IMG/VR virus record: IMGVR_UViG_3300005941_000003
Span: 124,001 to 188,000 of that record
Strand: one strand, 5' to 3'
Length of the DNA: 64,000 nucleotides
Part shown: positions 1,342 through 49,175 of the stretch, piece by piece
How positions within the stretch are numbered: position 1 is the stretch's first letter
How the letters are laid out: each line of letters opens with the position of its first letter
Made by a program: the position numbers and the translations under genes
Notes under the pieces: generated by a model
The model's input: the letters and a program-made list of their open reading frames with translations, nothing else
Databases searched by the model: none
Told to the model about the DNA's origin: nothing

Positions 1342-4300
1342 ATGACAGTTCGTAACGTTAGAAACAATAACCCAGGTAACATTAGACTTAGTAGTACTGA
1401 GTGGGTTGGCGCAGTGCCGGGTAGCGACAGTTCATTCGTGACATTCGCGACACCGGAAGCAGGCGTTCGTGCGATGACCAAGAACCTTTACTCATATCAA
1501 AGTCGATATGGATTGGGTACTGTCAATGAAATGATATCTCGTTGGGCGCCACCCAATGAAAACAACACAACCGCATACGTAAACAGAGTTGCTGCGTCCA
1601 TGGGCGTTGATCCAAACCAAACTATCAATTTAAGAGATAACCCACAGTTAACAGAGCGTATGGTTTCTGTAATGATACGAGAAGAAGGCGGCGCGGAAGC
1701 AGCGAACTATTTTAGTCCTCATATTGCTCAAGGTGTTGTTGATGCAAACAGTTCAACAGTAACATATCCAACATCCACATCACCCGCACAAGTAGATCCT
1801 GCGGTGGCTGGTACTGAAGGATCAACAGGTGCGAGAAACTACAATTCTGCCGCAGACATAACTGCAATTGCTAGACCAGAAGATTTAGCCTCACTAGAAA
1901 GTTCTGTTTCGTGGTTACCGAACGCACTAGATGATTATGAAAATTATACTTACAATTTAGAATTGTTTTTAGTTGATCAACGTTCGGCAGCAGATTTCCT
2001 ATCTCCAACAGGTACGTCTCTTGATAGCATTGTAGACGATGCATGGCCTGGAAGCGGAACACAAAAAATAATAATTGCAAAAACTGGTATAACAACTGAA
2101 TTCAATATACAAGATTTGGAAATACAATCACTCGGTGCGACACATCAAAACTTCGGTATTGTAGGTGCAGCATTGAAATTAAGTTTCTCTATAGTTCAAG
2201 TTGGAAGAAGTAAGTTAGCAGAAATATTGAAATCTGCAACACTACTAGCTGGTTATTCTAATATTGGTTCTGCGAAGTTTTTCTTAAAAATTAATTTTAT
2301 GGGATATGATGAAAATGGCAATTCGTTTAGAATACCAAGATCGACTAAAGTAATACCATTCATAATATCAAATACAGCCGAAGTTCAAACAAGTAGTACT
2401 ATTGCCGGTACTACAACTTCAATTGAAGGTTCAGTAGTTCGTTATGGTGCCATGGATTATGGTGCAGATACAATTTCAACATCATTTGAGTACGAAATAG
2501 GTGATAACGTAGAAGATACTATAAACAATCTTTTAACAAAGTATAATGAATACCTAGTACAAACTAACTTCGGCGGTGATACAAAATTCATCAACACTTA
2601 TTCAGTAAAAGCAATAAACGATGACATAAAAAATGAATTTTTTGTTAATAACAAAGTGATGCTTGATGGCTTCCCAAACTTTGGTTCAGCTAATCATAAT
2701 ACGTACAGAAGTGCGGCGCCCGGACAAATGGCAACTGCAATGCCAATTGGTACTCTAAATCCTGGGACAAGTCTAATGGAAAGTATATTAGATGTGTTCA
2801 TGAATTCAGAAGTTGTTAAACGAAATCTAACAGAGGATCAAGTATCATTTACTGATGTGTTATCTATATATGTAGATTATGTACCTAAGGTAGATGGGTA
2901 CAATGTAATGACAAATACTGAAGGTGCAGATATAACATATTACATTGGCAAAAAGAGAGAACTTGTTGAACAGAGCGCAGCATCAACAATGGTTCATGCC
3001 AAAAACAATAAAACAATCGTTGATGAAATAGTAAACGAAGGTAAATTAAAAAAGATATATCGTTATCTGTATACAGGTAGAAATGATCAAGTTCTTAACT
3101 TTGAAATAAGTTTGAAACAACAATTAATAAAAACCTACGTATCTGCATCTGGTGAACAAATGTGGACAAAACTGTTAGATGATTATGGTATAGTTTTAAA
3201 AAGTGTGTTAGGAAATGATCGTGCGGTTGCTAAACTACAAGAAATGAGTTCAGCCGCTAATACGACACGTAGTTCATTGGAAGAAGCTAGAGCAAGTTTA
3301 CAATCAATGACATCTGATAATACTACATGGATGACCAGTCAAAAAGATAGAATTATTGAATCGTTGACTGCATCCGGTGCACCAGCAGAAGAAGTAGCAC
3401 GGGCGCAAAGCATGTCCCTTGATCAACTACTAGCGCATAATTCAACTATTGGTGCAACTAGTGGTGGAGCAAATGGTGACGGCTTGCGAGGCGGAACAAC
3501 AGATTATCTTGCTCGCGTACTTTCAAATACTCCAATACAACGACTAAGATCCGAGTTTGAAACGAGAACGTCACAATTAGGAGATATTCGTAATACCGTT
3601 AACAACTTACGCGATTCCATTAAGAGTGCAGATGATGAATTAACTAGAGGCATACAGACTATTTTCGGACAAGCGATAAATGCATTGGGTGGAGCAGGTT
3701 TGGTACAGAATTTGTCCACAGCAGGTATACAAACATCAACATCTAATGCTGGTGCAAATTTGGGAACATATGTATTGGCAGAAAACATGACAAGTGATAG
3801 TATAAATTCTATTGCACCGGGTGAACTTTTATCTGTACTCAATGCAGTTTCTACTAATCCTACCATTTTTGTTGAACTAACGAAAGGTATTTTGGCACAC
3901 AATAGACAATTAAAAAGTATTGCAACTAACGACCCAGAGTATGTGGAACTTGCTAAAGAGAAATATTATGAAGCACATTCCGGTGATATTAGCATGATGG
4001 AAGCAACTATGGAAATACGCGGCGATCCTTTCTGGATTGACAATCATATCTCACCTGCAAAGTATCAAAGTGAATTTACAAAAAATACAAACAGCAACTA
4101 TCCAAACGATAGATCAGAACATAACGGATTTAATTATGTTATGATTGTATCAAATGCAGTAGATGGTGAAGATGAAAATGATAATCCAAAAATTGCAAGA
4201 TTGTTAACTTACATTTATAATGTGAAGGGTATAACTAGTAGATTTGATGGTGGTAAATTCACTCAAACATTGGATATGGTTAGATTGCATATCGCTGATG

Positions 4301-4392
4301 GTTACAAGACTACACAAGGATCGGAAGTTTTGGGCAGAAGCATGGTTCCAGTTGAAAATGATAATTCAACAACCAGAAACCTTGCAAGATAA
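1342..4392 (+). CDS. Baseplate hub-like protein with N-terminal lysozyme-like (NNPGN family) domain
   Basis: N-terminus RNNNPGNIR...FATPEAGVRAM...ISRWAPPNENNT.AY. C-terminus MEIRGDPFW...Y.V..ITSRFDGGKFTQTL is hub (gp27/VgrG-type) like. Lies between the gp53- and gp5-like genes. Confidence 0.7.
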   Translation: MTVRNVRNNNPGNIRLSSTEWVGAVPGSDSSFVTFATPEAGVRAMTKNLYSYQSRYGLGTVNEMISRWAPPNENNTTAYVNRVAASMGVDPNQTINLRDNPQLTERMVSVMIREEGGAEAANYFSPHIAQGVVDANSSTVTYPTSTSPAQVDPAVAGTEGSTGARNYNSAADITAIARPEDLASLESSVSWLPNALDDYENYTYNLELFLVDQRSAADFLSPTGTSLDSIVDDAWPGSGTQKIIIAKTGITTEFNIQDLEIQSLGATHQNFGIVGAALKLSFSIVQVGRSKLAEILKSATLLAGYSNIGSAKFFLKINFMGYDENGNSFRIPRSTKVIPFIISNTAEVQTSSTIAGTTTSIEGSVVRYGAMDYGADTISTSFEYEIGDNVEDTINNLLTKYNEYLVQTNFGGDTKFINTYSVKAINDDIKNEFFVNNKVMLDGFPNFGSANHNTYRSAAPGQMATAMPIGTLNPGTSLMESILDVFMNSEVVKRNLTEDQVSFTDVLSIYVDYVPKVDGYNVMTNTEGADITYYIGKKRELVEQSAASTMVHAKNNKTIVDEIVNEGKLKKIYRYLYTGRNDQVLNFEISLKQQLIKTYVSASGEQMWTKLLDDYGIVLKSVLGNDRAVAKLQEMSSAANTTRSSLEEARASLQSMTSDNTTWMTSQKDRIIESLTASGAPAEEVARAQSMSLDQLLAHNSTIGATSGGANGDGLRGGTTDYLARVLSNTPIQRLRSEFETRTSQLGDIRNTVNNLRDSIKSADDELTRGIQTIFGQAINALGGAGLVQNLSTAGIQTSTSNAGANLGTYVLAENMTSDSINSIAPGELLSVLNAVSTNPTIFVELTKGILAHNRQLKSIATNDPEYVELAKEKYYEAHSGDISMMEATMEIRGDPFWIDNHISPAKYQSEFTKNTNSNYPNDRSEHNGFNYVMIVSNAVDGEDENDNPKIARLLTYIYNVKGITSRFDGGKFTQTLDMVRLHIADGYKTTQGSEVLGRSMVPVENDNSTTRNLAR

Positions 4393-4409
4393 AAGTATAG
4401 GAAAAATAA

Positions 4410-6455
4410 ATGAGACCTAGAGGAAAAACTGGCTTAAAAGACATAATAAAATCTGGACAGCGGAATTCTAACAACCCACTGTTAGATAGAGTTAGTAGCG
4501 GCATTTATAGAGCCATAACAGTAGACGCTGCCGATCCAGAAGGTAGAGGTAGACTAGCTGCGTATATACCTGCACTTGGTGGATCATCCGAAAATCCGAT
4601 ATTCTTCCAATATGCAAGTCCATTCGGCGGCTCTAACGGTTCTAGTAACTATGGATTTTTTGCAGTTCCGCCAGATCCGGGCGTAACAATTATGGTATTC
4701 TTTGCAGATGACTCAGATATGACTGCTGGATATTGGTTCGCTGTTCTACAACAAATACCAAACGTTGTAAGTGGTGGTGCAGCCGGTGCGCCACAAGTAG
4801 ATGGTACTGGCCAAGGTCAAGGGGCGTTCGTAGATGCTGAGTCTTCTAAGGGGGCAGTCACTACTATAACTCAAGGTCAAAATCCAGATACTGCAATATT
4901 TTATGATGAAAACGGTAATCCAGTTTACCCTAGGGGCAGTGATCAATCACAATCCGGCGCAACTGCAAGCGGTAGCCAAGGTGATAGGTTACGTGGTCCG
5001 GGTTCAGAACAACGTTGGACCGACGCAGATGTGGCAAGAGTTGAGCAATTAAAAACCGCGGATGAATCATTCGGTGGTGGAGGTAGATTTAGTTTAACAC
5101 CAGCAGAAAAAGCATATGCACAAAGTCGAGGTTATTTAGGTGCTGGTGCAACTGCCTCAGGCGCAGCGGGTGATGGACTTCGTGGTGGAAGTACAACTAG
5201 TAATACAAGTACAACTAGTAATACAACTGAAGGCTCGCCTATACCAAATAGTGGTAGAAACGCAAACTTGGCTGCTCAAGGTACTTATACCGACCCAATA
5301 CGCGGGCAATCAAGTTCTACCCCAATACGGGACGCCAGTTATCAAACGCCGGGACCTAGTAGAGTCTATGGTATGGCGACGCCTGGCCAGTCCGCGATCA
5401 CTTTTGATGACGGTAGTGTGGGAGATGATGGAACTGTTCACCCATCACATGTGCGACTTACAACAGGTAGTGGCGCAAGTTTAATATTAGATGGCACAAA
5501 CGACATGATCTATATGGTAAACTCAAGCGGATCCGGTTGGGTAGAAATAGGAAAAGACGGTAACATCGTTATGTATGGTAGTGGTAGTATTAGCATGAGA
5601 GCCGAAGGGGATTTCAACCTACGTGCAGATCAAAACATAAATTTAGAAGCCGGCGCAAAATTCAATGTTAAAACAGGTGGTAACATCATGTTTGATGGTT
5701 CTGGTCAATTACATTTAAAAAGTTCAGGAACACAATTTTTAGATACTGGTGGGGCTATGCACCTAAAAGTGGGAGCAAATATGTATGCCAGTACTGGCGG
5801 AAAGATGCACTTGAATGGTCCTCAGGCTGCAATGTCTATGGGTATCGGTACGTCTGCAATGCCGGATATACAAAATTTAGAAAGCACAAGAGTTGAAAGT
5901 TCTTGGCAAGGTGGGGGTAGTTCGCTACCAACTGTACCTTCACATGAACCTATGATGAGACCTGCACCAAATAACACAGGTGGTGGGCCCATTGTACCTG
6001 ATCCAAATAGTTACACAGAAAAGACAATCAACGATGTACCTGCCGCGAATTATACAGGCGAGAATGGAAAATTAGATCCTAGCAATCTAGCGTCTATAGG
6101 TAATGGCATTCAAATACGTAAAGATGCAGCGGATGCATGGAACAGAATGGCAGCGGCTGCAAAAGCTGACGGTATTAATTTATCGCCATCGTCTGGATAT
6201 AGATCATACGAACACCAGCTTAGATTGTGGCAAGGCGCTCTTAGAAAATACGGCACACCCGCTGCGGCTCGAAAGTGGGTTGCTCCTCCGGGTAACTCAA
6301 ATCACGGTTGGGGTATCGCGGTTGATGAAGGTGTAATCTACAACAACAGAGCACCGTCAAACCCACATTACAGGTGGCTTAATAGTAATGCGGGTAGATT
6401 TAATTTTTATCAGAGAATGTCTTGGGAACCATGGCATTGGGAATTTAGAGGTTAA
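4410..6455 (+). CDS. Baseplate central spike (gp5-like) with C-terminal VanY/M15B D,D-carboxypeptidase domain
   Basis: OB-fold start (DPEGRGRL...PPDPG..IMVFF), Gly-rich beta-helix repeats and an HEP motif. The C-terminal SGYRS...SNHGWGIAVD...EPWHWE matches the SxHxxGxAxD / ExxH Zn-peptidase motifs. Confidence 0.85.
   Translation: MRPRGKTGLKDIIKSGQRNSNNPLLDRVSSGIYRAITVDAADPEGRGRLAAYIPALGGSSENPIFFQYASPFGGSNGSSNYGFFAVPPDPGVTIMVFFADDSDMTAGYWFAVLQQIPNVVSGGAAGAPQVDGTGQGQGAFVDAESSKGAVTTITQGQNPDTAIFYDENGNPVYPRGSDQSQSGATASGSQGDRLRGPGSEQRWTDADVARVEQLKTADESFGGGGRFSLTPAEKAYAQSRGYLGAGATASGAAGDGLRGGSTTSNTSTTSNTTEGSPIPNSGRNANLAAQGTYTDPIRGQSSSTPIRDASYQTPGPSRVYGMATPGQSAITFDDGSVGDDGTVHPSHVRLTTGSGASLILDGTNDMIYMVNSSGSGWVEIGKDGNIVMYGSGSISMRAEGDFNLRADQNINLEAGAKFNVKTGGNIMFDGSGQLHLKSSGTQFLDTGGAMHLKVGANMYASTGGKMHLNGPQAAMSMGIGTSAMPDIQNLESTRVESSWQGGGSSLPTVPSHEPMMRPAPNNTGGGPIVPDPNSYTEKTINDVPAANYTGENGKLDPSNLASIGNGIQIRKDAADAWNRMAAAAKADGINLSPSSGYRSYEHQLRLWQGALRKYGTPAAARKWVAPPGNSNHGWGIAVDEGVIYNNRAPSNPHYRWLNSNAGRFNFYQRMSWEPWHWEFRG
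5190..5225 (+). repeat. Perfect 18-bp tandem duplication (STTSNT x2) in the spike linker
   Basis: agtacaactagtaataca repeated twice. Confidence 0.9.
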
Positions 6456-6465
6456 GGGGTTATAA

Positions 6466-7110
6466 ATGATTTTTGACAAAAGACAAGGTTCATTATTAAA
6501 TTTAATTCAGTTACCTTTGAATGTGGTTACACCATATGGTACATACCTAGGTGTTGGGTATGATAAAAATAACGAACCAGAGTATATTCTTTCGCATGTA
6601 AGAGTTACTACATTTGAATTAAAAGATTTAGTTTTTTCAGACTTTAGTAAAGAATACATAATGAAAAAAGAGAAACCGATATTGGAACTCACATCTGATA
6701 TGAAAATTGGCTACGATTATGAAGTAACCCCTACAGAACAAAAGTATGGATATATCACAGTTGCATCTAAACGTATTTCATTAGATACTGGTAAGATAAC
6801 AAAAGCAGAAGCGAATTTTATTTTAGAAAAACAATTACGTCACATTGGTACTGTTCTTGAGAATTTCATAACTCAGCCATTGGGTCAGCCACAGTATGAT
6901 GCACTTCTAATATATTTTTATTATGAAGGCGTTAATAGAATTAAAGATAGTGGATTGATTAAGATGATCAATCAAGGGGATGCGTGGTTCTACATCACAG
7001 ATGAAATTCAGACTGGTATAAAAAGAGCGAACGGCAGAGTTGATGAACAACTTGCCGCTCGTAAAATGGATATTGCTAATATGTGGAGTTATGTGCCTGG
7101 TTTTAGTTAA
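6466..7110 (+). CDS. Degenerate GH24 (phage lysozyme)-fold baseplate protein
   Basis: IGY...[10 protein letters not shown]...[16 protein letters not shown]...LIKMINQGD...[12 protein letters not shown] follows the GH24 C-lobe pattern. The catalytic loop is not canonical. Confidence 0.55.
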
Positions 7111-7733
7111 ACTGGGCGCTTATCCATAACTTTATCTGCTAGACCCCATTCAACTGCATCTTCCGCACGTAAGAATGTATCGTATTTCATTGTTTCATAC
7201 AATTCATCAAACGACTTACCAGCAGTATTGTGACTTACATAAATTTCTGTAAGACGCTTATTCAAATCTTTCGCTTCCTGTAGATGGCGAAGATTGTCTT
7301 CCATTTCCATTTCTTGTACATGAACAGAACCACGAGTTCCACCAGTTCCAGATGATACACGGTGAATCATCGTGCGTGAGTTTGGAAGAACATAACGCTT
7401 ACCTGCTGCACCTGCTTGTGCAAGAAGTGAACCCATTGAGGCTGCTTGACCAATTACTGTGGTTGATACGTCTGGTTTAATAAACTGCATCGTATCGTAA
7501 ATTGCAAGTCCTGATGTTACAGAGCCGCCCGGAGAGTTGATATAAAAATGAATATCTTTATCTGGGTTTTCTGCTTCCAGAAACAGAAGTTGCGCACATA
7601 GTAGATCGGCTTGATAGTCATTTACTTCACCAGTTAGGAAGATCACACGTTCTTTAAGAAGGCGTGAGAAGATATCATAACTGCGTTCTCCGTTAGCAGT
7701 TTGATCGACTACCATTGGTACTAGGTTTGGCAT
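7107..7733 (-). CDS. clpP: ATP-dependent Clp protease proteolytic subunit
   Basis: [51 protein letters not shown] (Ser), MIH (His) and YDTFL (Asp). Confidence 0.95.
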
Positions 7734-12928: not shown

Positions 12929-15900
12929 ATGGCAAATAAGATTTACGACTTTCTTCCAGCCCATTTGCAAAATAAAGAGCTAGAGACAATATTTGAAGCA
13001 ACACTTGAACGTGTATTTTCTAAAGGTAATATAGAAAAAACACGCGCATACGTTGGTAGAAAAGAAAAAGGGGTGTATAAGAAAGACGATGCATATCTTT
13101 CATACCCTACATTCTCGTACTCTAGAACGAATTATTCGCTTGAGCCAGTGTTTTCTAATGTGAGCATTAACGAGAATATTTTTTACGACGATTTAATAAA
13201 TTCTCTATACAATCATGGTTCGCTAACAAACGACCATAGACGGCTATTTCAATGTGATAGAAACACAGTAAACTTACCTATCGATATCGATAAGTTTGTG
13301 AACTGGAGTAGCTATTACTGGGTAAGTCCGCTATTTGCTCCAAATGAGAATATAAACGGTTCGGACATCAGAAGTTATGTTACTATTGATCGTATGGAGA
13401 CCCCAAACAACTGGTGGTCGTTCAATAACTCTTGGTATCATTACGATGACATTAAACATTTAATTGATGAAACAAATAGAAATGAACTTCATCAAGCACA
13501 AAGACCTATTATTGAGTTCGACAATAGGCTTTCACTTGATGATGAATCTTTGAACAAAGCGTTCGATTCTGTTGAAATAACTGAACCTAAGTTTTTGATA
13601 TTCGACAGTGAAAACAATTATATAACATCTGCAAAGATATTTTCATACGTAACAGGTGATTATGCATATGATTCTGAATTGGGTCTATATGCAAAATTGA
13701 GTGTTGGTGATTATGCAAGTGAGTATAACTATACAATAGATATTGATGTAGATGTTTTCTACAATGTAGATACTGTTGGGTTGACAAACATTTATATTCC
13801 AACAGAATTTAACTACAGAAACTACCGTCAAGAAGTGAGTGAAAACGCAATTTCATCTATTGAATTACTACATGAACCTATCGATACAAATAGTGTTGAT
13901 GTGTATTTCGACGGTATAAAACAGTATGGTAATTACTCGATTGTAAATGATATCGTTGTTTTCGACAATACAGTTGAAGACAAATTTGTTTATGTTGATT
14001 ATTGTACAAAGAATGAAGTTACTATTGAGGGTGCAGGTAATTATCAGCGTATTGACCCTGCAATAGAATTTAACCCAGATAACTCATATCACACTAATGT
14101 AGAACTAACATATTCTGTACTGTTTGAGCATTTTATTCGTATCATGGAAACTGTTCCGGGTATGGACGTAAATCCTGTTGGTCACAGTCCATTTAGAAAT
14201 CTAGGTGACAACAGTGACAAATTACGCTTCAACAATTACGGTAGTGTAATGGTTAGAACAAATACAGACACAAAGTTCGGATACTTCTGTGTCACAAAAG
14301 ATGACTACAACCCGTTCGATGCGATTGAAACACTATCATCTGCGTATAGTTCATATAAGAATAAGTTTGTTACACGTGTTCGCGAAATTCTGTCAGAAGC
14401 AGGAAGTGATTCAAAAACAGATTCAGAAATACTAGAACAAGCTATCACTAATATTATTGCACTTCAAGGTCGCCCGTTGATGTTTAAAGACATTAACATG
14501 ATAAATTTCGGTAAAGAATATGCACATTATGAAGAACAACCAGTTGACGTTGTTATAGGTTCCAGTGAGCAATTTACTCCTGAGTTCTCTAAACCAGTTG
14601 TTGATGAATACGACATTTATGTATATGTTAATGGCAAACTGCAAGTTTTACGAACAGACTATGTAATGTCAATCGGTAATACAACTGTCAATTTTACTAA
14701 CGGTTACGTTGGTCAGGTAGGAGACGAAATTACTGTAAGATATTATATCAATAGCGAAGACGTATACATACCGCCTAGCTCAACTAAACTAGGTTTAAAC
14801 CCTGCATATGTACCTATCATAGTGACAGACAATGAATATGAAAATTCAGTAGATTTTATTGTAGGACACGATGGTTCAAAAACACCTGTATGGGGTGATA
14901 GAACAGATTCGATTCTATTAGAATTTGAAATTCGTTGCTATAACAACGTCCAAGATAAGTCATTCAACTACATAGACTATCAACACTACGGTCCATTCGA
15001 ATGGGCAGACGATAGCTATACATTGAATGAAAAGAATTACATTATGTATCCGTTCTTCAAAAAATGGATGTTAAAAAACAATGTAGACAGTCTAGAAAAC
15101 GTATCATACGACCCCAATAACTGGAAGACATGGAATTATAAATTCGTCAATGATATCACTCCCGGTAACTGGAGAGGTATGTATAGATATGTATATGGTA
15201 CTGACAACTTATTGAATGAACCTTGGTTGGTATTGGGTGTAGCATCAAAGCCTGCAAATTTCGATTTGTTCTATGGTACAGATTATACAACTGAGCAATT
15301 TTGGACAGATATTCTAAATGATGCAGGAAAGACTGCGCCAATTCCAGTAGACGCTTCTGGTAATCTAAGAACACCAGAAGATTTGTTCTTTGGTGGAAAT
15401 CTGTCAACCGATGACATTTCAAATATGAATTTAGATTGGGAATTCGGTGACGGGTCTCCAGTAGAATTTGCATGGCTAAGAAGTAGTGAATTCCCATTCA
15501 TTGCATTCTTGCAGATGATGATTGAACATCCTTTTGAAGTGCTTGATCGTTATAATTCACAAGTTAAAAATGTAATAGCACTATATAACAAGTTCAAAGG
15601 TCTCGACACAGACACTATACTTGCTGATTTAGAAAACTATGAATTTAGACTTGGTTCTAAACTTGGCGGGTTTGTGAACAACTTAAAGTTGTATGCTGAA
15701 AACACAAGTATCGGTAACAGTAATTTCACTGAAATTCCAAGAGACAACTTTGATTTACTTGTACATAAAGGCGAGCCAAATAGAAGTGAATTCTTTAGTG
15801 CTATCGTTATCGAAAAAGTTTCAATTGATACACCACATCCGATTTATGACATAAATGATATACTGTCATACAATAAAGGTGATATTGTATTAAATTCAAA

Positions 15901-18900
15901 CGACAAAAAGTATTACAGACGTAAAGTAGAAACCCCAACACAAAAAGAAATTGATCAAACGATTAACTTTGACTACAATGCTTGGACGCTGATATCACAA
16001 CCTAAGACGCGTTCATTTGGTTACAGAATTCATGGGTATGATGACTTTAACCCAGTGTTCTACGCATTAGATTGGGACAAGACATCAGAGGCAAAATTAT
16101 ATGCTACTGATGGCGATCCGCTACCTATCAACGATTGGATTTCTGGTGTAGGGTATAAAAATTCAGAATACTCAATTTATAATGGTCAGGTTTATGTATG
16201 CTTAGAACAGCATACATCAAGTACAATATTCGACAATGATTTCAAATATTGGAAACAATTATCAAGTAGACCTAGAACAAATCAAGTATTTGCGAATGGT
16301 TATAGTAAAGTACAAAACGATCAAGTCAAAGTCTTTAATTATGGTGATATCCTAACATCACTAGATGATGTTGCACATCTAATGGTTGGCTATCAAGAAT
16401 ATCTAAAACTTGTTGGTTGGAACTTTACAGATGTTGACAGCGAAGACAGTTCAATCATTGATTACGAAACTTTACTTCTAAAGTTCTTAGACTGGTCAGC
16501 AGAAACACACCAACCTGGCGAATTTATAACTCTATCACCAATGATTATCACTGGTGAATTCTCTGCGCCATATGGTGTTGCAAGTGTAACAAAAGAAACT
16601 CATCAAAACTACTATCGTGTAGTTGATAACATGGGTAGACTAATACCTGATACTGCAATTAAGTTCTATACAGATGGCGAAGTACTTCGTTGGGAATCTA
16701 GTGTACCAGTGTATGGTATGAAGATTGATATTAGCGACTTTGAACATGCTATCATTGTTGATCGTGAAGATTCATATGGTGACACAATTTACGATCCGCT
16801 AATGCACAATAGAAACCTGCGTCTAATAATTGACTGTAATAGAACTACAGATTGGGACGGAACTATGACCACAGAGGGTTATCTGTTGTACGGAAACACG
16901 ATGGTTCCTAACTTTGAAACAATTATTGAAGATACACGAAACTATAGAGATACGCTAGTTGATCAGAATTTAGAAGTTGTTAACTTACTAAAGTCTAATC
17001 AGTATGGTAGCGCAACTAGAACATACTTAGACAATCATAAAGTTGAACCAGAGAGTCAGCTTGAATTCTATAAAGGATTCTTAGCAGCAAAGGGTAAAAA
17101 AGATAGTATTGATCGTTTAATTAACAAAAATTCAAATATTAATAAAGTCGAACAGTTTGGTGTTTGGGCACACAAGTATGCAGAATTTGGTAAAACAAAT
17201 AACACAATACATGCGAATGCAACTGTAAATGTGAAAGATATGAAATCTAACCCACATCTTATTGATTTTGGTGATGTTGAAAAACGTTTTGTCAAAACAT
17301 CTGAACCTTATACTGCAAACTTCAAAACAACAGGTTATGTTGACAGCAGTTTAGTGAATTACACTGTGTCTGGTGAAAGTGCGCTAGAAACATTAGATAA
17401 CACCTTAATCTTTGAGGGCGATCTAGCATGGATACAATTCGACCCAGAAAGAGATTGGGACGTTAAGCGTCTTGGGGAAATCGCTGAAATAGATTATGTA
17501 CGTGAAACTAGTGATGGTCAATTATGTGTAGCACTTACAAATAGTATTGATACTACAGATACCGTGTTCTTACGAATTAATGATTCAAATATAGACCCAG
17601 TTATTAATGGATATTATTACCTGATCGAAGAAGGAACAAGAGACATTTCTGGTCTGACAGTGTACGAATATCTTGTATTTGAAACAAACTATGAACCGGT
17701 TTCAATTGAAATCGATACAACTACTAGCGACTCTATATATGTGCCTACATCAAATAATATTGGTGTTGAAGCAATTGGTACAATTAGTTTCCCTCAATTT
17801 TTATCAGGTGATACATTACTAATTAATGGTACTTCGTACATATATGCGGATGCAGCAGCTACTGGATATATCTCAATTGTAGGTGCTGATACTGCTACAG
17901 ATCCGTTTGTTCAACCTGGAGACACAATGCGTGTTGCGGTGTACAGTAGTGTGACAACTATAGAAAACGCAAACACAAACATCACATTTACTGGTACCGT
18001 GGCTGATACGACATATCCTGTAACATCAGTATATGGAGATATTATAGTAATAGATGGGACACCAATAAGCATAGATTATAGTTCTACTCAGAGTATAACA
18101 GAAGTTTCTACTGCAACTGAGACCACTGTGATTTCTAATGGTAAGACTGTGATAGTTGACGGCAATACAGTTGCGTTTGCAAATATAGAAATATTGGGTA
18201 CTATTGTATCGCCGACAATCACATCCACAAAGGCACTAAACATAAACGGTACAAATATTACGTTCACTGTTGCAGACCCGTTAACACCGCTAACTGCACA
18301 AGAAATCGTTGACACGATTAATGCTTCCTCAACTGGTTTGAGTGCTACACTGAATGTTGATGACAAGATCGACGTGGTGTTCTCTGGTATGATTTTAGAA
18401 ATGTCAGGTACTGCAATTCAAGACATTGGATTGGGTACAGAAAATACACTACGAATTTCTAAATTACAAAACGTGGCATCAGAACTAAATGTAATCACAG
18501 GTATAACATCATACGTTGATGCAACAGGTCATCTGGTAATTGGTTCATCTCTATCACAAATGACACTTTCCGGCACAGCGTTAACATCATTGGGATTCGA
18601 AGCTGGTACTTATGAGTCAACAACTGATCCGAACAAGACAAGTATCGTGAACCAAATTAACAGTTCTGGAATACCTAACGTATCTGCGTCTGCTACTTCG
18701 GTCGGTGTTAGAATTACAAAAAATGGATCAGTTCTAACTGTGACTGAGGATTCTTCAACACCTGGTGCGATGACACGTTTAGGTTTCACCACATCATCAG
18801 TTGAAGTTGACGCCCTTGATTTGATTGTGGAACAGTTAAACAGTGTAATTTTTGAGAATGATACTAACATAGGTACTGCATTAGCGACAGTTGATCGTAG

Positions 18901-21667
18901 AATCAAAATACTATCACCGCAGTTTTCTATTGTTCTTAGTGATGTGTCTGGTAACACATTGGCTGATCTGGGTCTAGTGTCGGGTACGTATTCTAATACT
19001 GGCGGTAATATACAACCGGTATATACATTTGCATCAATAATCAACTCAGTATCCACAGACGTTAGAGTAACAGTTACGTCAGATGGAAGAATGGTATTCA
19101 CAAGTGATGCGCCTACATTGACATTCCAAGGAACGTCTTCTTCTATGCTGACAAAGGTAGGGCTGAGAACCGAATACACAAGTATCACAAGTAACAGCAA
19201 TTTCAAAATTATGCGTTGGAATTCGGTTCGTTACTCACCAGAATTCAACAACGTTGATTTTGATGACTGGTATCGTGATCTTGGATTGAATAGTCAAACG
19301 ACACTATGGGTCGATGAATATACGAACGGAAAATGGGCAGTACTAAATCGTAGTGATGTTGGGTTCCTTTCAGTTGTAGCGACACAAAGTTCACGTGTTG
19401 ATTCAACTAAAATGAACAGACTTATTGCAAAAGATGAATCAGATACATTTAAAACTTATTATGTGTATGATCCACTATATGGCCGTCTACCTGGTGAACT
19501 ACTGAAAAATATAAACTACATAACATGGGAAAACCCTGCAAAATATGATAGTGTGACATCATCAGATGTGTGGTTGGATGATCATGTAGGAGAAGTTTGG
19601 TGGGATACAGCTAATGTAAGATATTACAGATATCACGATTACGGTGATAAGCTAGGAAATATCGATGTATCATACGTAAGAAAATTCTGGGGTAAACTTG
19701 TACCCGGTTCAGAGATTGTTGTTAAGAAGTGGACCACATCACAAGTGCTACCTTCAACTGTAACAGATTATAATACATATACATACTACGACATTGTTTC
19801 AAATGCGCTAGTTACAAAGTATTACTACTGGGCTGAAACAGAGCAACGTACAGGAAATGAAATCACTATTAGTGATATCAGTGCGATGATCTCCTCTCCA
19901 ATAGGAACAAACTATTTTATTCCAGTAACAGATAATTCTATTATCGTTACCAATAAAGCGAATACGTTTGTTGGTAAGACTGTAGACTTTGAATTGCGTT
20001 ATAATATTACATCGGATACAACTGAATTGCATACTGAGTGGGAATTGTTCAACGATGATATCAATTCAAACCATGCAGGATACGCTAAAACTCAAATCAT
20101 AAATGATTTAGCATTACGCGAAGTTCAATCTTCTGTAGTATTTGAAATAGATGACGCGTCAGTATCGGATCCAACTTATGTTACATACGAACATCAAATG
20201 TTTGAAGATTGCACAATTGAAAACACTGTTGTGTCAGTTAACAGCGAATTCGTGTTGCCAAACAACATCGTGTTCGACAACGGTATCATGACCGTCATTA
20301 ACGATGGATATTTGATCGGTGATGTCGTGTGCGTGTATAAACTTGAAACATTGCAACCAATGTTAATCAAGAACACAAATACTGCAAGATCAAACTTTGC
20401 AAGTATTGTAAATGATATAATGTCACATAAAAACATCGATGCTTTTGCACCACAGTGGAGAGAATATGTCTCAGTAAGTTATGCTGTTAATTTGCATGAT
20501 TGGGTATTAAATGATGATTTTCAAAATACAGATGACTATGAGTACACATCAAATTCATATAACATTGATATGATTGATATGTATAACAATGGTGTTAATT
20601 CATTTAAAATAACCATAGATAAAAATGATGTATATGATTCATATTACTATCCAGTTAATGGTGAACTTCGACTAGTGAAGCGATCAAATTCAGCAATCAA
20701 TCTATCATTTGAAGATATGGTTTATCCTATAAACTCATATGATACGTATTTTGATAACGTAGTAGCAGTACAGATTATAGAATTTATCAATATGATAGAA
20801 GATAACGGTGGTGATGAAATTATGAAACAGATTGTTATCGGTATGGTAGATTACATGTTTACAGAACGACATGATCACGAATTGTCAATATTCAAGACAA
20901 GTTATATTGATGTGAACTTTACATATCGTCCATTGGCACAACATGCAGTATATCAAAGAGATTCATACCAAGATATGCTAGATTACATTAACGAAACAAA
21001 ACCGTATCACGTTAAAGTTCGTAATGTGAAATCAAAGTATACATTAGAAGATGATATTATAAGTGATGTTTCAGAAGAACGCCACATTGAAATAACAATG
21101 GACTTTGGTAACAACAGCAGATATAAACTTAACGTCCTTTCTGGTGAAGGAAACGATAATATAGCAGATGCGACTACAGGTGAGAATATCACAACAACGT
21201 ATGATGCTGGTAAATTACTGCGTAATGACGTTGACTTGACTAGTGAACCTGATGGTTTTGATACTGGTTTTGTACAAGCATATGCGAATGACGCAGTTTT
21301 ATTCAAAGAAGTAAATTGGACAGATGAAACTAGATTGACACTTGACAATTTGAAGTTTTATGTATATGATCAGTTTGGTAGAGGTTATATTGTACACATA
21401 GGACAGACAGATACCGTAAGCAACGTATACGGTAACAAAATCGTAGTTAACGACGAAACTCTGTTTAGGTCTGCAAAGTCAAAAACAAAGAGGCTAATTG
21501 CGCTTGAAAATGAGAACGGTCTTGAATTCATGATGTATGATAATTTATCTGGTGCAGAATTAAATATTTCGGACAGAGGCCTTTACACAGGTCTTTATGG
21601 TAATTTCTCAAGCGGTGATGCAATATTTGTAGTAGATCATATTGAGACCATAACAGCTGGTAACTAA
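12929..21667 (+). CDS. Very large baseplate wedge / virion structural protein (gp7-like position), 2912 aa
   Basis: Follows gp6. N-terminal IYDFLP..LQ...F and C-terminal YINETKPYHVKVR motifs. Contains CBM5/12-like W-x5-Y segments and a Ser/Thr-rich repeat region. Confidence 0.7.
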   Translation: MANKIYDFLPAHLQNKELETIFEATLERVFSKGNIEKTRAYVGRKEKGVYKKDDAYLSYPTFSYSRTNYSLEPVFSNVSINENIFYDDLINSLYNHGSLTNDHRRLFQCDRNTVNLPIDIDKFVNWSSYYWVSPLFAPNENINGSDIRSYVTIDRMETPNNWWSFNNSWYHYDDIKHLIDETNRNELHQAQRPIIEFDNRLSLDDESLNKAFDSVEITEPKFLIFDSENNYITSAKIFSYVTGDYAYDSELGLYAKLSVGDYASEYNYTIDIDVDVFYNVDTVGLTNIYIPTEFNYRNYRQEVSENAISSIELLHEPIDTNSVDVYFDGIKQYGNYSIVNDIVVFDNTVEDKFVYVDYCTKNEVTIEGAGNYQRIDPAIEFNPDNSYHTNVELTYSVLFEHFIRIMETVPGMDVNPVGHSPFRNLGDNSDKLRFNNYGSVMVRTNTDTKFGYFCVTKDDYNPFDAIETLSSAYSSYKNKFVTRVREILSEAGSDSKTDSEILEQAITNIIALQGRPLMFKDINMINFGKEYAHYEEQPVDVVIGSSEQFTPEFSKPVVDEYDIYVYVNGKLQVLRTDYVMSIGNTTVNFTNGYVGQVGDEITVRYYINSEDVYIPPSSTKLGLNPAYVPIIVTDNEYENSVDFIVGHDGSKTPVWGDRTDSILLEFEIRCYNNVQDKSFNYIDYQHYGPFEWADDSYTLNEKNYIMYPFFKKWMLKNNVDSLENVSYDPNNWKTWNYKFVNDITPGNWRGMYRYVYGTDNLLNEPWLVLGVASKPANFDLFYGTDYTTEQFWTDILNDAGKTAPIPVDASGNLRTPEDLFFGGNLSTDDISNMNLDWEFGDGSPVEFAWLRSSEFPFIAFLQMMIEHPFEVLDRYNSQVKNVIALYNKFKGLDTDTILADLENYEFRLGSKLGGFVNNLKLYAENTSIGNSNFTEIPRDNFDLLVHKGEPNRSEFFSAIVIEKVSIDTPHPIYDINDILSYNKGDIVLNSNDKKYYRRKVETPTQKEIDQTINFDYNAWTLISQPKTRSFGYRIHGYDDFNPVFYALDWDKTSEAKLYATDGDPLPINDWISGVGYKNSEYSIYNGQVYVCLEQHTSSTIFDNDFKYWKQLSSRPRTNQVFANGYSKVQNDQVKVFNYGDILTSLDDVAHLMVGYQEYLKLVGWNFTDVDSEDSSIIDYETLLLKFLDWSAETHQPGEFITLSPMIITGEFSAPYGVASVTKETHQNYYRVVDNMGRLIPDTAIKFYTDGEVLRWESSVPVYGMKIDISDFEHAIIVDREDSYGDTIYDPLMHNRNLRLIIDCNRTTDWDGTMTTEGYLLYGNTMVPNFETIIEDTRNYRDTLVDQNLEVVNLLKSNQYGSATRTYLDNHKVEPESQLEFYKGFLAAKGKKDSIDRLINKNSNINKVEQFGVWAHKYAEFGKTNNTIHANATVNVKDMKSNPHLIDFGDVEKRFVKTSEPYTANFKTTGYVDSSLVNYTVSGESALETLDNTLIFEGDLAWIQFDPERDWDVKRLGEIAEIDYVRETSDGQLCVALTNSIDTTDTVFLRINDSNIDPVINGYYYLIEEGTRDISGLTVYEYLVFETNYEPVSIEIDTTTSDSIYVPTSNNIGVEAIGTISFPQFLSGDTLLINGTSYIYADAAATGYISIVGADTATDPFVQPGDTMRVAVYSSVTTIENANTNITFTGTVADTTYPVTSVYGDIIVIDGTPISIDYSSTQSITEVSTATETTVISNGKTVIVDGNTVAFANIEILGTIVSPTITSTKALNINGTNITFTVADPLTPLTAQEIVDTINASSTGLSATLNVDDKIDVVFSGMILEMSGTAIQDIGLGTENTLRISKLQNVASELNVITGITSYVDATGHLVIGSSLSQMTLSGTALTSLGFEAGTYESTTDPNKTSIVNQINSSGIPNVSASATSVGVRITKNGSVLTVTEDSSTPGAMTRLGFTTSSVEVDALDLIVEQLNSVIFENDTNIGTALATVDRRIKILSPQFSIVLSDVSGNTLADLGLVSGTYSNTGGNIQPVYTFASIINSVSTDVRVTVTSDGRMVFTSDAPTLTFQGTSSSMLTKVGLRTEYTSITSNSNFKIMRWNSVRYSPEFNNVDFDDWYRDLGLNSQTTLWVDEYTNGKWAVLNRSDVGFLSVVATQSSRVDSTKMNRLIAKDESDTFKTYYVYDPLYGRLPGELLKNINYITWENPAKYDSVTSSDVWLDDHVGEVWWDTANVRYYRYHDYGDKLGNIDVSYVRKFWGKLVPGSEIVVKKWTTSQVLPSTVTDYNTYTYYDIVSNALVTKYYYWAETEQRTGNEITISDISAMISSPIGTNYFIPVTDNSIIVTNKANTFVGKTVDFELRYNITSDTTELHTEWELFNDDINSNHAGYAKTQIINDLALREVQSSVVFEIDDASVSDPTYVTYEHQMFEDCTIENTVVSVNSEFVLPNNIVFDNGIMTVINDGYLIGDVVCVYKLETLQPMLIKNTNTARSNFASIVNDIMSHKNIDAFAPQWREYVSVSYAVNLHDWVLNDDFQNTDDYEYTSNSYNIDMIDMYNNGVNSFKITIDKNDVYDSYYYPVNGELRLVKRSNSAINLSFEDMVYPINSYDTYFDNVVAVQIIEFINMIEDNGGDEIMKQIVIGMVDYMFTERHDHELSIFKTSYIDVNFTYRPLAQHAVYQRDSYQDMLDYINETKPYHVKVRNVKSKYTLEDDIISDVSEERHIEITMDFGNNSRYKLNVLSGEGNDNIADATTGENITTTYDAGKLLRNDVDLTSEPDGFDTGFVQAYANDAVLFKEVNWTDETRLTLDNLKFYVYDQFGRGYIVHIGQTDTVSNVYGNKIVVNDETLFRSAKSKTKRLIALENENGLEFMMYDNLSGAELNISDRGLYTGLYGNFSSGDAIFVVDHIETITAGN

Positions 21668-47734: not shown

Positions 47735-47803
47735 CGCCGCGCGGGGCGAAGTTCGAGCGGCACCAAGATAATCCCGGAACAAGCCATCGGAGATGGCTTG
47801 GTT
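47735..47803. other. GC-rich intergenic element with hairpins
   Basis: gccgc/gcggc (47736-47761) and the perfect caagccatc-gga-gatggcttg hairpin (47780-47800), followed by aaaatttttt. Confidence 0.6.
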
Positions 47804-47823
47804 AGGAAAATTTTTTGGAGCAT

Positions 47824-47843
47824 TAAGTGCGCACTTATAAATA
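47824..47843 (+). promoter_or_regulatory. 14-bp palindrome overlapping a late promoter TATAAATA that lies 5 nt before ATG 47849
   Basis: taagtgcgcactta (47824-37); TATAAATA (47836-43)-tatct-ATG. Confidence 0.7.
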
Positions 47844-47848
47844 TATCT

Positions 47849-49108: not shown

Positions 49109-49175
49109 GGGTAAGTTGAGGCATAGTGTTACGGAAAACCAAAAAAATGCTTGCGGGATGGCCTCAGATTCGCGG

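What the first reader, a model, noticed from the sequence alone, without database searches (positions are those of the whole stretch)
3451..5189. Shared GAT(A)SG..GD(G/R)LRG(G/P) motif occurs three times in two non-homologous baseplate proteins
Seen: GATSGGANGDGLRGG in the hub (3451-3495), and GATASGSQGDRLRGP (4956-5000) and GATASGAAGDGLRGG (5145-5189) in the spike. The codons differ between copies, so conservation is at the peptide level. All copies lie in low-complexity linkers, and one is followed directly by the (STTSNT)2 repeat. Inference: a recognition tag, either a maturation-protease site (GG/LRGG resembles double-glycine and ubiquitin-like cleavage sites, and T4 gp5 is cleaved during maturation), a docking motif, or a sequon for the island's modifying enzymes. 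In the spike, the two copies bracket a ~48-aa segment that could be excised.
Basis: partly seen in the sequence, partly recalled or inferred. Interest (0 to 1): 0.62.

Follow-up and report, generated by a model that had tools for sequence, protein, structure and literature searches.

The report
Portable peptide tag on phage tail-tip proteins
A 15-residue peptide repeated three times in this giant phage's baseplate hub and spike is a real, selected tag that unrelated uncultured aquatic phages also carry on the flexible tails of the proteins that first enter the host; its partner is unknown, but it most likely acts as a tethered docking signal.

Summary
GAT(A)SG-x2-3-GD(G/R)LRG occurs exactly three times in the 246-kb record and in the 342-kb near-complete record. 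All three copies lie in the adjacent gp27-like hub and gp5-like spike genes; about 1e-7 would be expected by chance.

Back-translated scans found 21 distinct instances in uncultured aquatic phages. There were none credible in 185,579 prokaryote genomes and no match in 50,697 cultured phage records. Every carrier belongs to the tail tip or ejection apparatus: gp27-like hubs, gp5-like spikes, a T4-like gp48 tube cap, and an ejection-protein-like protein of a P22-like podovirus. Where modelled or aligned, the motif lies in disordered or hypervariable segments. Nine instances are the exact C-terminus (...GDGLRG-stop).

Codons are scrambled between instances, so selection acts on the peptide. Hubs 81% identical in fully syntenic loci carry other tails, so the tag is a swappable accessory cassette.

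Best reading (confidence about 0.4): a tethered docking ligand for a partner outside the phage lineage, probably a host envelope component. A protease site, a modification sequon and intra-virion docking remain rivals. The genome has no CE-clan protease, JAB or E1. The radical-SAM island is clade-wide, not motif-linked. The 48-aa "excisable" segment is a conserved folded mini-domain.

The parts
1342..4392 (+). Baseplate hub gene (P0001, 1016 aa). It has a gp27-like core, an N-terminal peptidoglycan hydrolase domain and an inserted helical hairpin.
   Evidence: The AF2 model (59-sequence alignment, mean pLDDT 75.8) matches hub proteins by Foldseek: phi812 hub 9euf_E, PdpA 6u9f, T4 gp27 2z6b_D/1k28_D, VgrG and Mu gp44. 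It hits phrog_11190 'virion structural protein'. Its synteny matches the MS-confirmed PA5oct structural protein next to the spike.
1342..1749 (+). Hub N-terminal Enc34-endolysin-like / T7 gp16-type peptidoglycan hydrolase domain (residues 1-136).
   Evidence: phmmer against the PDB: 9vvp_L Gp29 at 4.6e-27 and 7q47 endolysin at 3.7e-16. Foldseek: 7q47 at 4e-7. phrog_873. tblastn hits internal virion transglycosylases.
3217..3684 (+). Long helical hairpin inserted in the hub core (residues 626-781). It carries the motif on its tip loop.
   Evidence: AF2 secondary structure: helices 626-677 and 682-706, a loop, then helices 722-728 and 732-781, with pLDDT below 50 at 712-719. Residues 728-777 weakly resemble the Lpp coiled coil. 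The small-phage hubs lack this insertion (alignment A5).
3451..3495 (+). Motif copy H, GATSGGANGDGLRGG (hub residues 704-718).
   Evidence: No variant is listed inside it in the ~99% identical strains.
4410..6455 (+). Central spike gene (P0002, 681 aa). Domain order: OB fold, linker module, beta-helix, VanY/M15 peptidase.
   Evidence: Pfam: VanY at 9e-25 on residues 567-681, and a weak Phage_base_V match on 33-110. phrog_13211 'baseplate hub subunit and tail lysozyme' on 347-493. PDB hits: LdcB/VanY, PHIKZ164 and gp5.
4956..5000 (+). Motif copy A, GATASGSQGDRLRGP (spike residues 183-197).
   Evidence: It lies in the pLDDT<50 segment 171-199. The position is conserved in orthologues P0003 (GATASGDMGDGLRGG) and L041 (GATSGDDSGDGLRGS). 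The strain variant 4986 A>G changes R193 to G, giving the consensus GDGLRG.
5001..5144 (+). 48-aa two-helix mini-domain between copies A and B (residues 198-245).
   Evidence: pLDDT 73-85, with helices 205-220 and 231-239. Conserved in P0003 and L041. Absent from other spike relatives, which join the OB fold directly to the beta-helix, or carry a lysozyme-like insert there (L008). No Pfam or Atlas assignment.
5145..5189 (+). Motif copy B, GATASGAAGDGLRGG (spike residues 246-260).
   Evidence: It lies in the pLDDT<50 segment 248-309. It is absent from orthologues P0003 and L041. Its only listed strain variant is synonymous (5162 C>A).
5190..5225 (+). (STTSNT)2 repeat directly after copy B.
   Evidence: Strains in other runs carry an 18-nt insertion, a third unit, so the repeat number is polymorphic while the motif is kept.

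Best explanation
The peptide G-A-T-(A)-S-G-x2-3-G-D-(G/R)-(L/F)-R-G is a portable short linear motif under selection. I call it a 'tail-tip tag'. It is displayed on flexible leashes (disordered linkers, C-terminal tails, the tip loop of a helical stalk) of the proteins at the distal end of the tail or ejectosome. In this phage the hub trimer and spike trimer would together present nine copies.

I think it most likely acts as a tethered docking ligand. When the needle and hub (or, in podoviruses, the ejection proteins) enter the cell envelope, the leash lets the tag capture a partner that does not belong to the individual phage lineage. That partner is most plausibly a periplasmic, cell-wall or inner-membrane component of a shared host group. 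Capturing it would help to position or stabilise the DNA-delivery channel.

Shown:
- The motif is non-random.
- Selection acts on the peptide, not the DNA.
- It is restricted to viral sequence.
- It is restricted to tail-tip and ejection proteins in three virion architectures.
- It lies in predicted-disordered or hypervariable context where modelled or aligned.
- Its position in the protein does not matter.
- Close relatives exchange it for other tails.

Inferred:
- It binds something.
- The partner is host-encoded.
- Binding happens in the periplasm.

A sub-inference follows from the nine natural ...LRG-stop ends. A free C-terminus may be the preferred form, and internal copies might be trimmed to expose it.
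For: (1) Non-random. There are three copies and no other GD.LRG in the 246-kb and 342-kb records, against an expectation of about 8e-8.

(2) Selection on the peptide. The 21 distinct instances have scrambled codons, including Ser AGY/TCN, Leu CTN/TTR and Arg CGN/AGR switches. Third-position identity is 0.43. In ~99% identical strains, one motif change is synonymous, the other moves copy A to the consensus, and the adjacent repeat changes copy number.

(3) Virus-specific. IMG/VR gave 24 + 8 loci and metagenomes gave 23, of which 19 are in the carrier families. By contrast, 596 Gb of prokaryote genomes gave 4 out-of-context, high-GC hits, none reading GDGLRG. A tblastn of a 51-aa motif-bearing segment found no match in the cultured-phage collection.

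(4) Carriers are all tail-tip or ejection proteins:
- gp27-like hubs (phrog_11190)
- gp5-like spikes (phrog_13211)
- a gp48-like tube cap in a T4-like contig (phrog_230, next to gp53-, gp4- and gp19-like genes)
- a 344-aa protein sitting where P22 has its ejection proteins, in a CRP-901/HTVC023P-like podovirus
.
A podovirus and two kinds of myovirus share no baseplate assembly factor, which points to a partner outside the phage.

(5) Position-independent and on leashes. The tag sits on a loop tip in this hub, a post-OB linker in three spike orthologues, a C-terminal extension of another spike, and the exact C-terminus of hubs and the tube cap.

(6) Accessory and swappable. Hubs 81% identical, in loci collinear with 80-95% identical neighbours, differ only in the last ~40 residues: tag, two tags, or unrelated tails. 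Twenty-five P0004 orthologues at 47-68% identity lack it, within an indel-rich linker. None of 79 further hub loci carries it. This pattern is typical of host-interaction modules, not of core assembly contacts.
Against: No partner is identified and no binding was tested, and the host is unknown. No prokaryote genome carries the full motif, so if this is mimicry it is not mimicry of a full-length host motif.

About ten near-invariant positions is long for a docking motif. Such length would also suit an enzyme recognition site.

The exact stop after LRG in nine instances, and the LRG(G) resemblance to ubiquitin-like tails, are equally well explained by a processing or conjugation model.

The 'periplasm' step assumes a Gram-negative host, which is not established. 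It also assumes T4/P22-like behaviour of these proteins, which rests on homology only.
Confidence: 0.4

Rival explanations
1. Proteolytic maturation site. A virion or host protease cuts after ...GDGLRG and leaves a ...LRG C-terminus. This would resemble the T4 gp5 Ser351/Ala352 cut, the glycine-rich Tal site of TP901-1, or the processing of ubiquitin-like precursors. Proteins that end in LRG would then be genetically 'pre-processed'.
For: - Nine of 21 instances stop exactly after LRG (once LRT), in two independent protein families (hub and gp48-like).
- The residue after internal LRG is small: G eight times, S three times.
- Copy B lies in the linker before the beta-helix, where T4 gp5 is cut (PDB titles 1k28 and 1wth; the T4 site itself is from my own knowledge).
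- Most internal copies fit the adenain-type consensus LXGG-X / LXGX-G (consensus from my own knowledge).
- The TP901-1 Tal glycine-rich motif NGGGNSGGGD is a documented processing site in a gp27-like tail protein (PMC11409707).
- A second protease gene (ClpP-like) sits next to the spike.
Against: - For the nine C-terminal instances a cut after LRG removes nothing, so cleavage cannot be the common function.
- Copy A has Pro after LRG, and L041 has LRGS-T, which fits neither adenain form.
- No Peptidase_C48, Peptidase_C5, Prok-JAB or ThiF gene is present in the 92%-complete genome.
- The phage's gp21-like prohead protease belongs to a family that cuts after Glu (my own knowledge), and the tag has no Glu.
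- The ClpP-like gene is also present in the motif-negative relative L008.
- A cut in the hub at residue 717 would split the conserved gp27-like core.
Confidence: 0.2
2. Intra-virion docking site. The tag recruits a phage-encoded cargo, adaptor or assembly chaperone to the hub-spike complex, as VgrG C-terminal tails select type VI effectors.
For: - Variable C-terminal tails on gp27/gp5-like proteins are swapped between close relatives, as with VgrG tails (my own knowledge).
- The tag can sit on hub, spike or tube cap, all parts of one complex.
Against: - The tag also occurs in an ejection-protein-like protein of a podovirus that has no hub.
- No gene is gained or lost within about 3 kb either side between tag-positive and tag-negative syntenic relatives.
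- The mini-domain that accompanies the tag in this spike is absent from the other carriers.
Confidence: 0.15
3. Sequon for a post-translational modification, for example O-glycosylation of the Thr/Ser, or an Arg or radical-SAM modification by enzymes of the phage's sugar/radical-SAM island or of the host.
For: - Thr, Ser and Arg are invariant in a long, enzyme-site-like motif.
- Neighbouring stretches are S/T-rich: (STTSNT)2-3 and T-rich linkers.
- The window has at least 10 radical SAM/SPASM genes plus sugar-nucleotide enzymes at about 28-61 kb.
- The two other tag-positive jumbo records also carry 11 and 7 radical-SAM genes.
Against: - Tag-negative relatives have the island too: G010 has 9-10 radical-SAM hits, and the complete 453-kb G008 has 6.
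- The tag-positive podovirus fragment has none, so there is no specific co-occurrence.
- No glycosyltransferase family showed among the Pfam hits of the island genes. Absence was not searched for specifically.
- The C-terminal tags of the gp48-like protein are not next to S/T runs.
Confidence: 0.12
4. No specific function. The tag is a linker cassette that spread by recombination among co-occurring phages and is merely tolerated.
For: - It lies in hypervariable, indel-rich disordered regions and is sporadically present.
Against: - Ten positions are kept while synonymous sites are saturated and the surrounding linkers vary freely in length and sequence.
- The strain variant restores the consensus.
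- Recent DNA transfer is excluded by the codon differences.
Confidence: 0.05

Closest known systems
Tol/Ton boxes in the intrinsically unstructured translocation domains of colicins and pyocins, and the glycine-rich linkers of filamentous-phage g3p (my own knowledge)
   Same: A short conserved epitope is embedded in a Gly/Ser-rich disordered leash of a protein that enters the periplasm, and it captures a host periplasmic protein there. This is the mechanism I favour.
   Different: There is no sequence similarity to the TolB, TolA or TonB boxes, the partner is unknown and binding is untested. The carriers are virion tail-tip proteins, not bacteriocins.
VgrG C-terminal tails that specify effector loading in type VI secretion (my own knowledge)
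   Same: The carriers are gp27/gp5-like, and their short variable C-terminal tails are exchanged between close relatives.
   Different: No cargo or adaptor gene is found beside tag-positive loci. The tag also sits in internal loops and in a podovirus protein.
T4 gp5 maturation cleavage (Ser351/Ala352), and the glycine-rich processing site of lactococcal phage TP901-1/Tuc2009 Tal (PMC11409707)
   Same: A site in a flexible linker of a hub or spike protein that carries cell-wall hydrolase domains. Copy B lies just before the beta-helix, like the T4 site.
   Different: The sequence is unrelated to NGGGNSGGGD. Nine instances are C-terminal ends. No cleavage is shown here, and a cut at the tag would not separate the VanY domain from the helix.
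Ubiquitin-like C-terminal tails (LRGG) and the LXGG sites of CE-clan, adenain and deubiquitinase proteases (my own knowledge)
   Same: An L-R-G-(G) stretch at the end of a flexible tail. Some copies are genetically terminal and others are followed by more sequence, as with ubiquitin-like precursors.
   Different: The segments preceding the two spike copies are predicted disordered, with no beta-grasp fold before them. Natural ends are LRG, not GG. No E1, JAB, Ulp1 or adenain gene is present.
Short-linear-motif mimicry by eukaryotic viruses, for example C-terminal PDZ-binding motifs (my own knowledge)
   Same: Short motifs appear sporadically in disordered regions or at the exact C-terminus of viral proteins from unrelated lineages, and are kept by selection on the peptide.
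   Different: I found no description of an equivalent in phages: a full-text search for the motif strings found nothing relevant. No host protein with the full motif was found.

Membership tests
gp27-like baseplate hub (P0001) | gp27/VgrG-N fold (tandem tube-like barrels) | tested here: met
   Foldseek of the AF2 model hits the phi812 hub, PdpA, T4 gp27, VgrG and Mu gp44, with E from 2e-6 to 3e-3 and probability about 1.
gp27-like baseplate hub (P0001) | Encoded next to the central spike, and present in virions | tested here: met
   The gene lies immediately upstream of the spike. The syntenic PA5oct homologue is an ESI-MS/MS-confirmed structural protein. Virion presence of P0001 itself is not testable here.
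gp5-like central spike (P0002) | N-terminal OB fold plus C-terminal triple-stranded beta-helix | tested here: met
   Phage_base_V is weak (17.7 bits, below the cut-off), DUF2345 is weak, and phrog_13211 scores 2.8e-21. PDB hits include the PHIKZ164 and gp5 helices. tblastn matches 'baseplate hub subunit and tail lysozyme' of PA5oct and others.
gp5-like central spike (P0002) | Lysozyme domain between the OB fold and the helix (T4 type) | tested here: not met
   Here that site holds the tag, a 48-aa mini-domain and a second tag. The relative L008 carries a lysozyme-like insert at the site (read by eye; no family scan was run on that protein).
Ubiquitin-like C-terminal tail | Beta-grasp domain directly before the tail | tested here: not met
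   For the two spike copies, the preceding segments have pLDDT below 50. In the hub, the segment before the tag is a modelled helix. Other carriers have G/T/S-rich linkers before the tag.
Ubiquitin-like C-terminal tail | Mature end is Gly-Gly | tested here: not met
   The natural ends are ...LRG (eight instances) and ...LRT (one instance).
Ubiquitin-like C-terminal tail | Cognate E1 or JAB/Ulp-type protease encoded | tested here: not met
   ThiF, Prok-JAB and Peptidase_C48 give no match at E<=1 in G000 or in the 92%-complete G001. Host enzymes are not testable.
Adenain/CE-clan cleavage site | Consensus (M/I/L)XGG-X or (M/I/L)XGX-G | tested here: inconclusive
   By inspection, 11 of the 12 distinct internal instances fit (8 LRGG-X, 2 LRGS-G and 1 LRGP-G). 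L041 (LRGS-T) and the nine terminal copies do not fit.
Adenain/CE-clan cleavage site | Peptidase_C5 or C48 protease in the genome | tested here: not met
Double-glycine leader (C39 peptidase substrates) | N-terminal leader of 15-30 aa ending in GG, with hydrophobic residues at positions -4, -7 and -12 | tested here: not met
   The copies lie at residues 704-718, 183-197 and 246-260, or at C-termini. Only position -4 (Leu) fits.
TP901-1/Tuc2009 Tal glycine-rich processing site | Glycine run (NGGGNSGGGD) at the junction before the lytic domain, with cleavage shown | tested here: not met
   The sequence differs, and the tag does not lie directly before the VanY domain (residues 567-681). Cleavage is not testable here.
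Colicin-type Tol/Ton box | TolB-box (DGSGW-like) or TonB-box sequence | tested here: not met
   By inspection of the 21 instances. Only the context (a disordered Gly/Ser-rich leash) is shared.
Sequon of the window's radical-SAM/sugar island | Co-occurrence of tag and island across phages | tested here: not met
   The island is present in tag-negative G010, G006 and G008, and absent from the tag-positive podovirus fragment G004.

The most novel reading that the evidence does not exclude
The tag may be a conjugation handle rather than a mere ligand. A free ...Leu-Arg-Gly carboxyl end, either encoded as such or exposed by trimming of internal copies, would be covalently joined to an envelope component. 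This could happen by a ubiquitin-like ligation, or by a host cell-wall transpeptidase that accepts Arg-Gly(-Gly) as a mimic of the diaminopimelate-D-Ala(-D-Ala) stem peptide. The effect would be to staple the tail tip to the cell wall during DNA delivery. Nothing here excludes this. Nothing beyond the exact LRG-stop ends and the LRGG resemblance supports it.
Probability: 0.05. Interest if true: 0.92.

Novelty: new variant of a known kind. Interest (0 to 1): 0.62.

Why it matters
Short linear motifs are a main way in which eukaryotic viruses hijack host proteins, but I know of no described equivalent on phage tail-tip proteins. Here a 14-15-residue peptide is kept by selection on the flexible tails of hubs, spikes, a tube cap and an ejection-type protein in at least three unrelated virion designs from the same kind of waters. 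Close relatives swap it for other tails.

If the tag docks to a host envelope factor, three things follow:
- It would be a handle for finding what the tail tip touches after piercing the outer membrane, a step that is poorly understood even in T4.
- It would mark phages that share a host.
- It would be a small, transferable host-range or efficiency determinant.

If instead it is a processing or conjugation site, it would define a new maturation chemistry of phage baseplates. Either way, a synthetic 15-mer peptide makes the question directly testable.

Tried and rejected
- Recent DNA duplication or gene conversion as the source of the three copies: rejected, because the codons differ.
- Chance: rejected.
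- L040/L042 (GATSGEVAGDRLRGSS): dropped as likely false positives, because the frame is antisense to a longer ORF.
- The four prokaryote-genome hits, and L059, L060, L061 and L067: dropped as out-of-context, high-GC matches.
- Word-based protein search restricted to the linker region: found only one orthologue, because a 15-mer cannot reach significance in 5.8 billion sequences. The DNA-pattern scans were the productive route.
- Pfam and ESM Atlas on the mini-domain, linkers, hairpin and P0004: nothing usable.
- Literature search for the motif strings: nothing relevant.
- The mini-domain as the tag's receptor: rejected, because it is confined to the window/P0003/L041 spikes.
- The ClpP-like neighbour as a tag-specific protease: not supported, because the tag-negative L008 has one in the same place.
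- RTX, EF-hand and collagen-like readings: rejected by inspection, because the Gly/Asp spacing does not fit.
- A stem-peptide-mimic/autoinhibitor reading for the VanY domain: considered, but L017/L028-type carriers have no M15 domain in their spikes.
- Complex prediction: not used. I claim no specific pair, and every candidate I could name had a low prior.

Full report
**1. The observation**

They lie in two adjacent plus-strand genes:
- ORF 1342-4392 (P0001, 1016 aa) carries one copy at residues 704-718.
- ORF 4410-6455 (P0002, 681 aa) carries two copies at residues 183-197 and 246-260.

The window is part of a 245,963-bp viral record (38.7% G+C). A six-frame scan of that record finds GD.LRG at these three places only, each preceded by GAT(A)SG. 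The 342,181-bp, 92%-complete record of the same phage also has exactly three.

Composition predicts 0.09 GD.LRG per genome, simulated genomes give 0.07, and the full motif is expected about 8e-8 times. The nucleotide alignment of the three copies shows different codons for Ser, Leu, Arg and Gly. (STTSNT)2 follows copy B directly.

**2. The two proteins**

*P0001, the hub.* It has no Pfam hit. Its N-terminus (residues 1-136) matches phage internal-virion transglycosylases and the Enc34 endolysin.

I collected 59 homologues from viral contigs. The resulting AlphaFold2 model has mean pLDDT 75.8. Foldseek matches its core to the phi812 hub, Francisella PdpA, T4 gp27, VgrG and Mu gp44. P0001 is therefore a gp27-like hub.

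The jumbo-phage branch of the family carries an inserted helical hairpin (residues 626-781). In this phage the motif is the low-confidence loop at the hairpin's tip.

*P0002, the spike.* It is gp5-like, with an OB fold, a beta-helix and a C-terminal VanY/M15 peptidase. The monomer model is poor overall (pLDDT 53) but clear about the region in question:
- residues 171-199 (copy A): pLDDT below 50
- residues 200-247: a two-helix mini-domain with pLDDT 73-85
- residues 248-309 (copy B and the repeat): pLDDT below 50

*Gene neighbourhood.* The order is the baseplate module of PA5oct-like jumbo phages, whose hub and spike homologues were found in virions by mass spectrometry:
- a structural protein
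- a small gp53-like protein
- the hub
- the spike
- a lysozyme
- a ClpP-like protease on the other strand
- a gp25-like protein
- a gp6-like protein
- a 2912-aa giant

**3. The motif elsewhere**

Two back-translated DNA patterns were scanned over IMG/VR, with the first also scanned over JGI metagenomes and over one genome from each of 185,579 prokaryote species.
- IMG/VR gave 24 and 8 loci.
- Metagenomes gave 23 loci.
- Prokaryote genomes gave 4. All four are high-GC, out of context, and never read GDGLRG.
- A tblastn of a 51-aa motif-bearing segment found no match in the 50,697 cultured phage records.
- No paper in the held library mentions the strings in a relevant context.

After removing false positives there are 21 distinct instances. 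Family scans of the carriers give:

| Carrier | Where the motif sits |
|---|---|
| gp27-like hubs homologous to P0001 (phrog_11190) | At or near the C-terminus, after a G/T/S-rich linker |
| gp5-like spikes (phrog_13211) | After the OB fold (P0003, L041), or on a C-terminal extension (L028) |
| gp48-like tail-tube cap of a T4-like contig, next to gp53-, gp4- and gp19-like genes | Last residues of the protein |
| 344-aa protein P0004 | Central linker |

P0004 comes from a podovirus related to Roseobacter phages CRP-901/902 and pelagiphage HTVC023P/027P. It stands after a gp10-like 'stabilization protein' and before genes of 466 and 604 codons. That is where P22 has ejection proteins gp7, gp20 (471 aa) and gp16 (609 aa) (the P22 gene order is from my own knowledge).

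Nine of the 21 instances are followed immediately by a stop codon (...GDGLRG-stop, once ...GDGLRT-stop).

**4. Selection**

Across lineages the invariant codons are scrambled. Ser uses both AGY and TCN, Leu both CTN and TTR, and Arg both CGN and AGR. Third positions agree in only 43% of pairwise comparisons. This shows selection on the peptide and rules out recent DNA transfer.

Within the L017 hub clade the preceding linker gains and loses GQTGGT units, while the motif stays fixed except at its x positions.

Contigs of ~99% identical strains from other marine, algal and aquatic metagenomes show 35 synonymous and 5 non-synonymous differences in 3300-5400. Of the two that fall in motifs, one is synonymous. 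The other changes Arg193 to Gly, turning copy A from GDRLRG into the consensus GDGLRG. The STTSNT repeat gains a third unit.

**5. The motif is accessory and mobile**

- Of 80 loci fetched by the hub's conserved GDPFW core, without regard to the motif, only the window's own phage has it.
- The spikes of those relatives join the OB fold directly to the helix. The window phage, P0003 (55-60% identical) and L041 (42-46% identical) have an insert there of motif plus mini-domain. L008 has a lysozyme-like insert at the same site, as T4 gp5 does.
- Copy B exists only in the window phage.
- In the L017 clade, hubs 81% identical over the core end in the motif, in two tandem motifs, or in unrelated tails. 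Their loci are collinear, with neighbours 80-95% identical and no gene gained or lost within about 3 kb.
- Related phages carry the motif on the hub tail (L017) or on the spike tail (L028).
- In the P0004 family, 25 orthologues at 47-68% identity lack it, within an indel-rich linker.

**6. Interpretation**

The facts to explain are these. The peptide is long and strongly selected. It is presented on leashes. Its position in the protein does not matter. It is confined to proteins at the tip of the tail or in the ejection apparatus. Three virion designs share it. Close relatives can do without it.

A core assembly contact does not fit. The tag is dispensable, and a podovirus shares no hub assembly factor with myoviruses. 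A partner outside the phage lineage fits better. By homology with T4 and P22, the common property of the carriers is that they enter the envelope first. I therefore favour a tethered ligand for a host envelope component, working like the Tol/Ton boxes of colicins (confidence about 0.4).

Binding, the identity of the partner and the compartment are all inferred, not shown.

**7. Rivals**

*Cleavage (about 0.2).* This is the only model that explains why the stop codon falls exactly after LRG in two protein families: a free ...LRG end might be the active form. Against it:
- It cannot be the common function of the terminal copies.
- Copy A has Pro after LRG.
- A cut at 717 would split the hub core.
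- The 92%-complete genome has no Ulp1-like, adenain-like, JAB or E1 gene.
- The gp21-like prohead protease is present elsewhere and its family cuts after Glu (my own knowledge).
- The ClpP-like neighbour also occurs in the tag-negative L008.

The nearest documented precedent is the glycine-rich Tal site of TP901-1 (PMC11409707).

*Modification sequon (about 0.12).* The window holds at least ten radical SAM/SPASM genes plus sugar-nucleotide enzymes. Two other tag-positive jumbo records have 11 and 7 radical-SAM genes. However, tag-negative relatives have such islands too (9-10, 6 and 3 genes), and the podovirus fragment has none. There is no specific link.

*Intra-virion cargo or adaptor docking, as with VgrG tails (about 0.15).* This is weakened by the podovirus carrier and by the absence of any differential neighbour gene.

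*A functionless cassette (about 0.05).* This is contradicted by the codon evidence.

**8. The 48-aa segment**

The segment between copies A and B is not a spacer awaiting excision. It is modelled with confidence as two helices, and it is conserved in P0003 and L041, which have only copy A. Its function is unknown.

**9. Limits**

- All relatives are uncultured, most records are fragments, and the host is unknown.
- The spike model is a shallow-alignment monomer.
- The pattern scans fixed the motif's invariant residues, so divergent versions are under-counted. One candidate is GDGLNGG after the N-terminal domain of the L041 hub.
- Read laying used contigs, not reads.
- No complex prediction was run, because I claim no specific pair.
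- Only genetic code 11 was used.

Noticed in passing
window 28034-61144 (for example 28034-31385, 33083-34501, 35354-36598, 44646-50441, 54067-54981, 59945-61144): A large island holds at least 10 radical SAM/SPASM genes. They are interleaved with sugar-nucleotide enzymes: UDP-glucose dehydrogenases, an epimerase, DegT, TylF and other methyltransferases, nucleotidyltransferases, a cupin and an aminotransferase. Similar multi-radical-SAM clusters occur in related jumbo-phage records, whether or not they carry the tag (G002 11, G003 7, G010 9-10, G008 6). So the island is a clade-wide feature with an unknown product.
   Followed up: partly
window 7107-7733 (-) and G000:C1:109743-110162 (-): A ClpP-like S14 protease gene sits on the opposite strand, right after the spike-lysozyme pair. 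It is also there in relatives L041 and L008. The phage additionally has a T4 gp21-like prohead protease (Peptidase_S77) elsewhere, so the ClpP-like enzyme is a second protease of unknown role.
   Followed up: partly
window 4956-5225, compared with L008 8400-9000, L097, L080 and L084: The junction between the OB fold and the beta-helix of the spike is an insertion hot spot. Most relatives have nothing there, L008 has a lysozyme-like domain (as in T4 gp5), and the window phage has tag plus mini-domain.
   Followed up: yes
window 1342-1749, 6108-6452 and 6466-7110: The hub module carries three separate cell-wall hydrolase activities: an Enc34-like domain on the hub, a VanY/M15 peptidase on the spike, and a free Phage_lysozyme gene. 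Relatives shuffle which enzyme sits on which protein. L041 has a different N-terminal domain on its hub (lysozyme-like by eye, not scanned) and an M15_4 peptidase on the spike.
   Followed up: partly
L154-L174 (hub C-termini), for example L156 5440-5577: The hub C-terminal tail is a swappable cassette. Besides the tag, close relatives end in several other unrelated short tails, for example one ending ...EREFDIELNEGVT. These could be alternative tags of the same kind.
   Followed up: partly
window 5190-5225: The STTSNT repeat number is polymorphic in nature. Strains in algal and aquatic metagenomes carry three units, through an 18-nt insertion after 5188/5189.
   Followed up: yes
L041 2105-6712 (hub, about residue 130): A possible degenerate tag, GDGLNGG, follows the N-terminal domain of the L041 hub. 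The L008 hairpin tip reads GLGGDGPE. Divergent versions of the tag may exist that the strict pattern missed.
   Followed up: no
window 12929-21667: A 2912-aa ORF lies directly after the gp6-like wedge gene, as in PA5oct, where the homologous position holds a 3858-aa virion protein.
   Followed up: no
whole record: The window's record (246 kb) is rated about 67% complete. Contigs of 341-342 kb carrying identical proteins exist in IMG/VR and ENA, and the spike protein is indexed in 60 blocks of the assembly collection. The phage is therefore widespread in marine and estuarine samples.
   Followed up: partly
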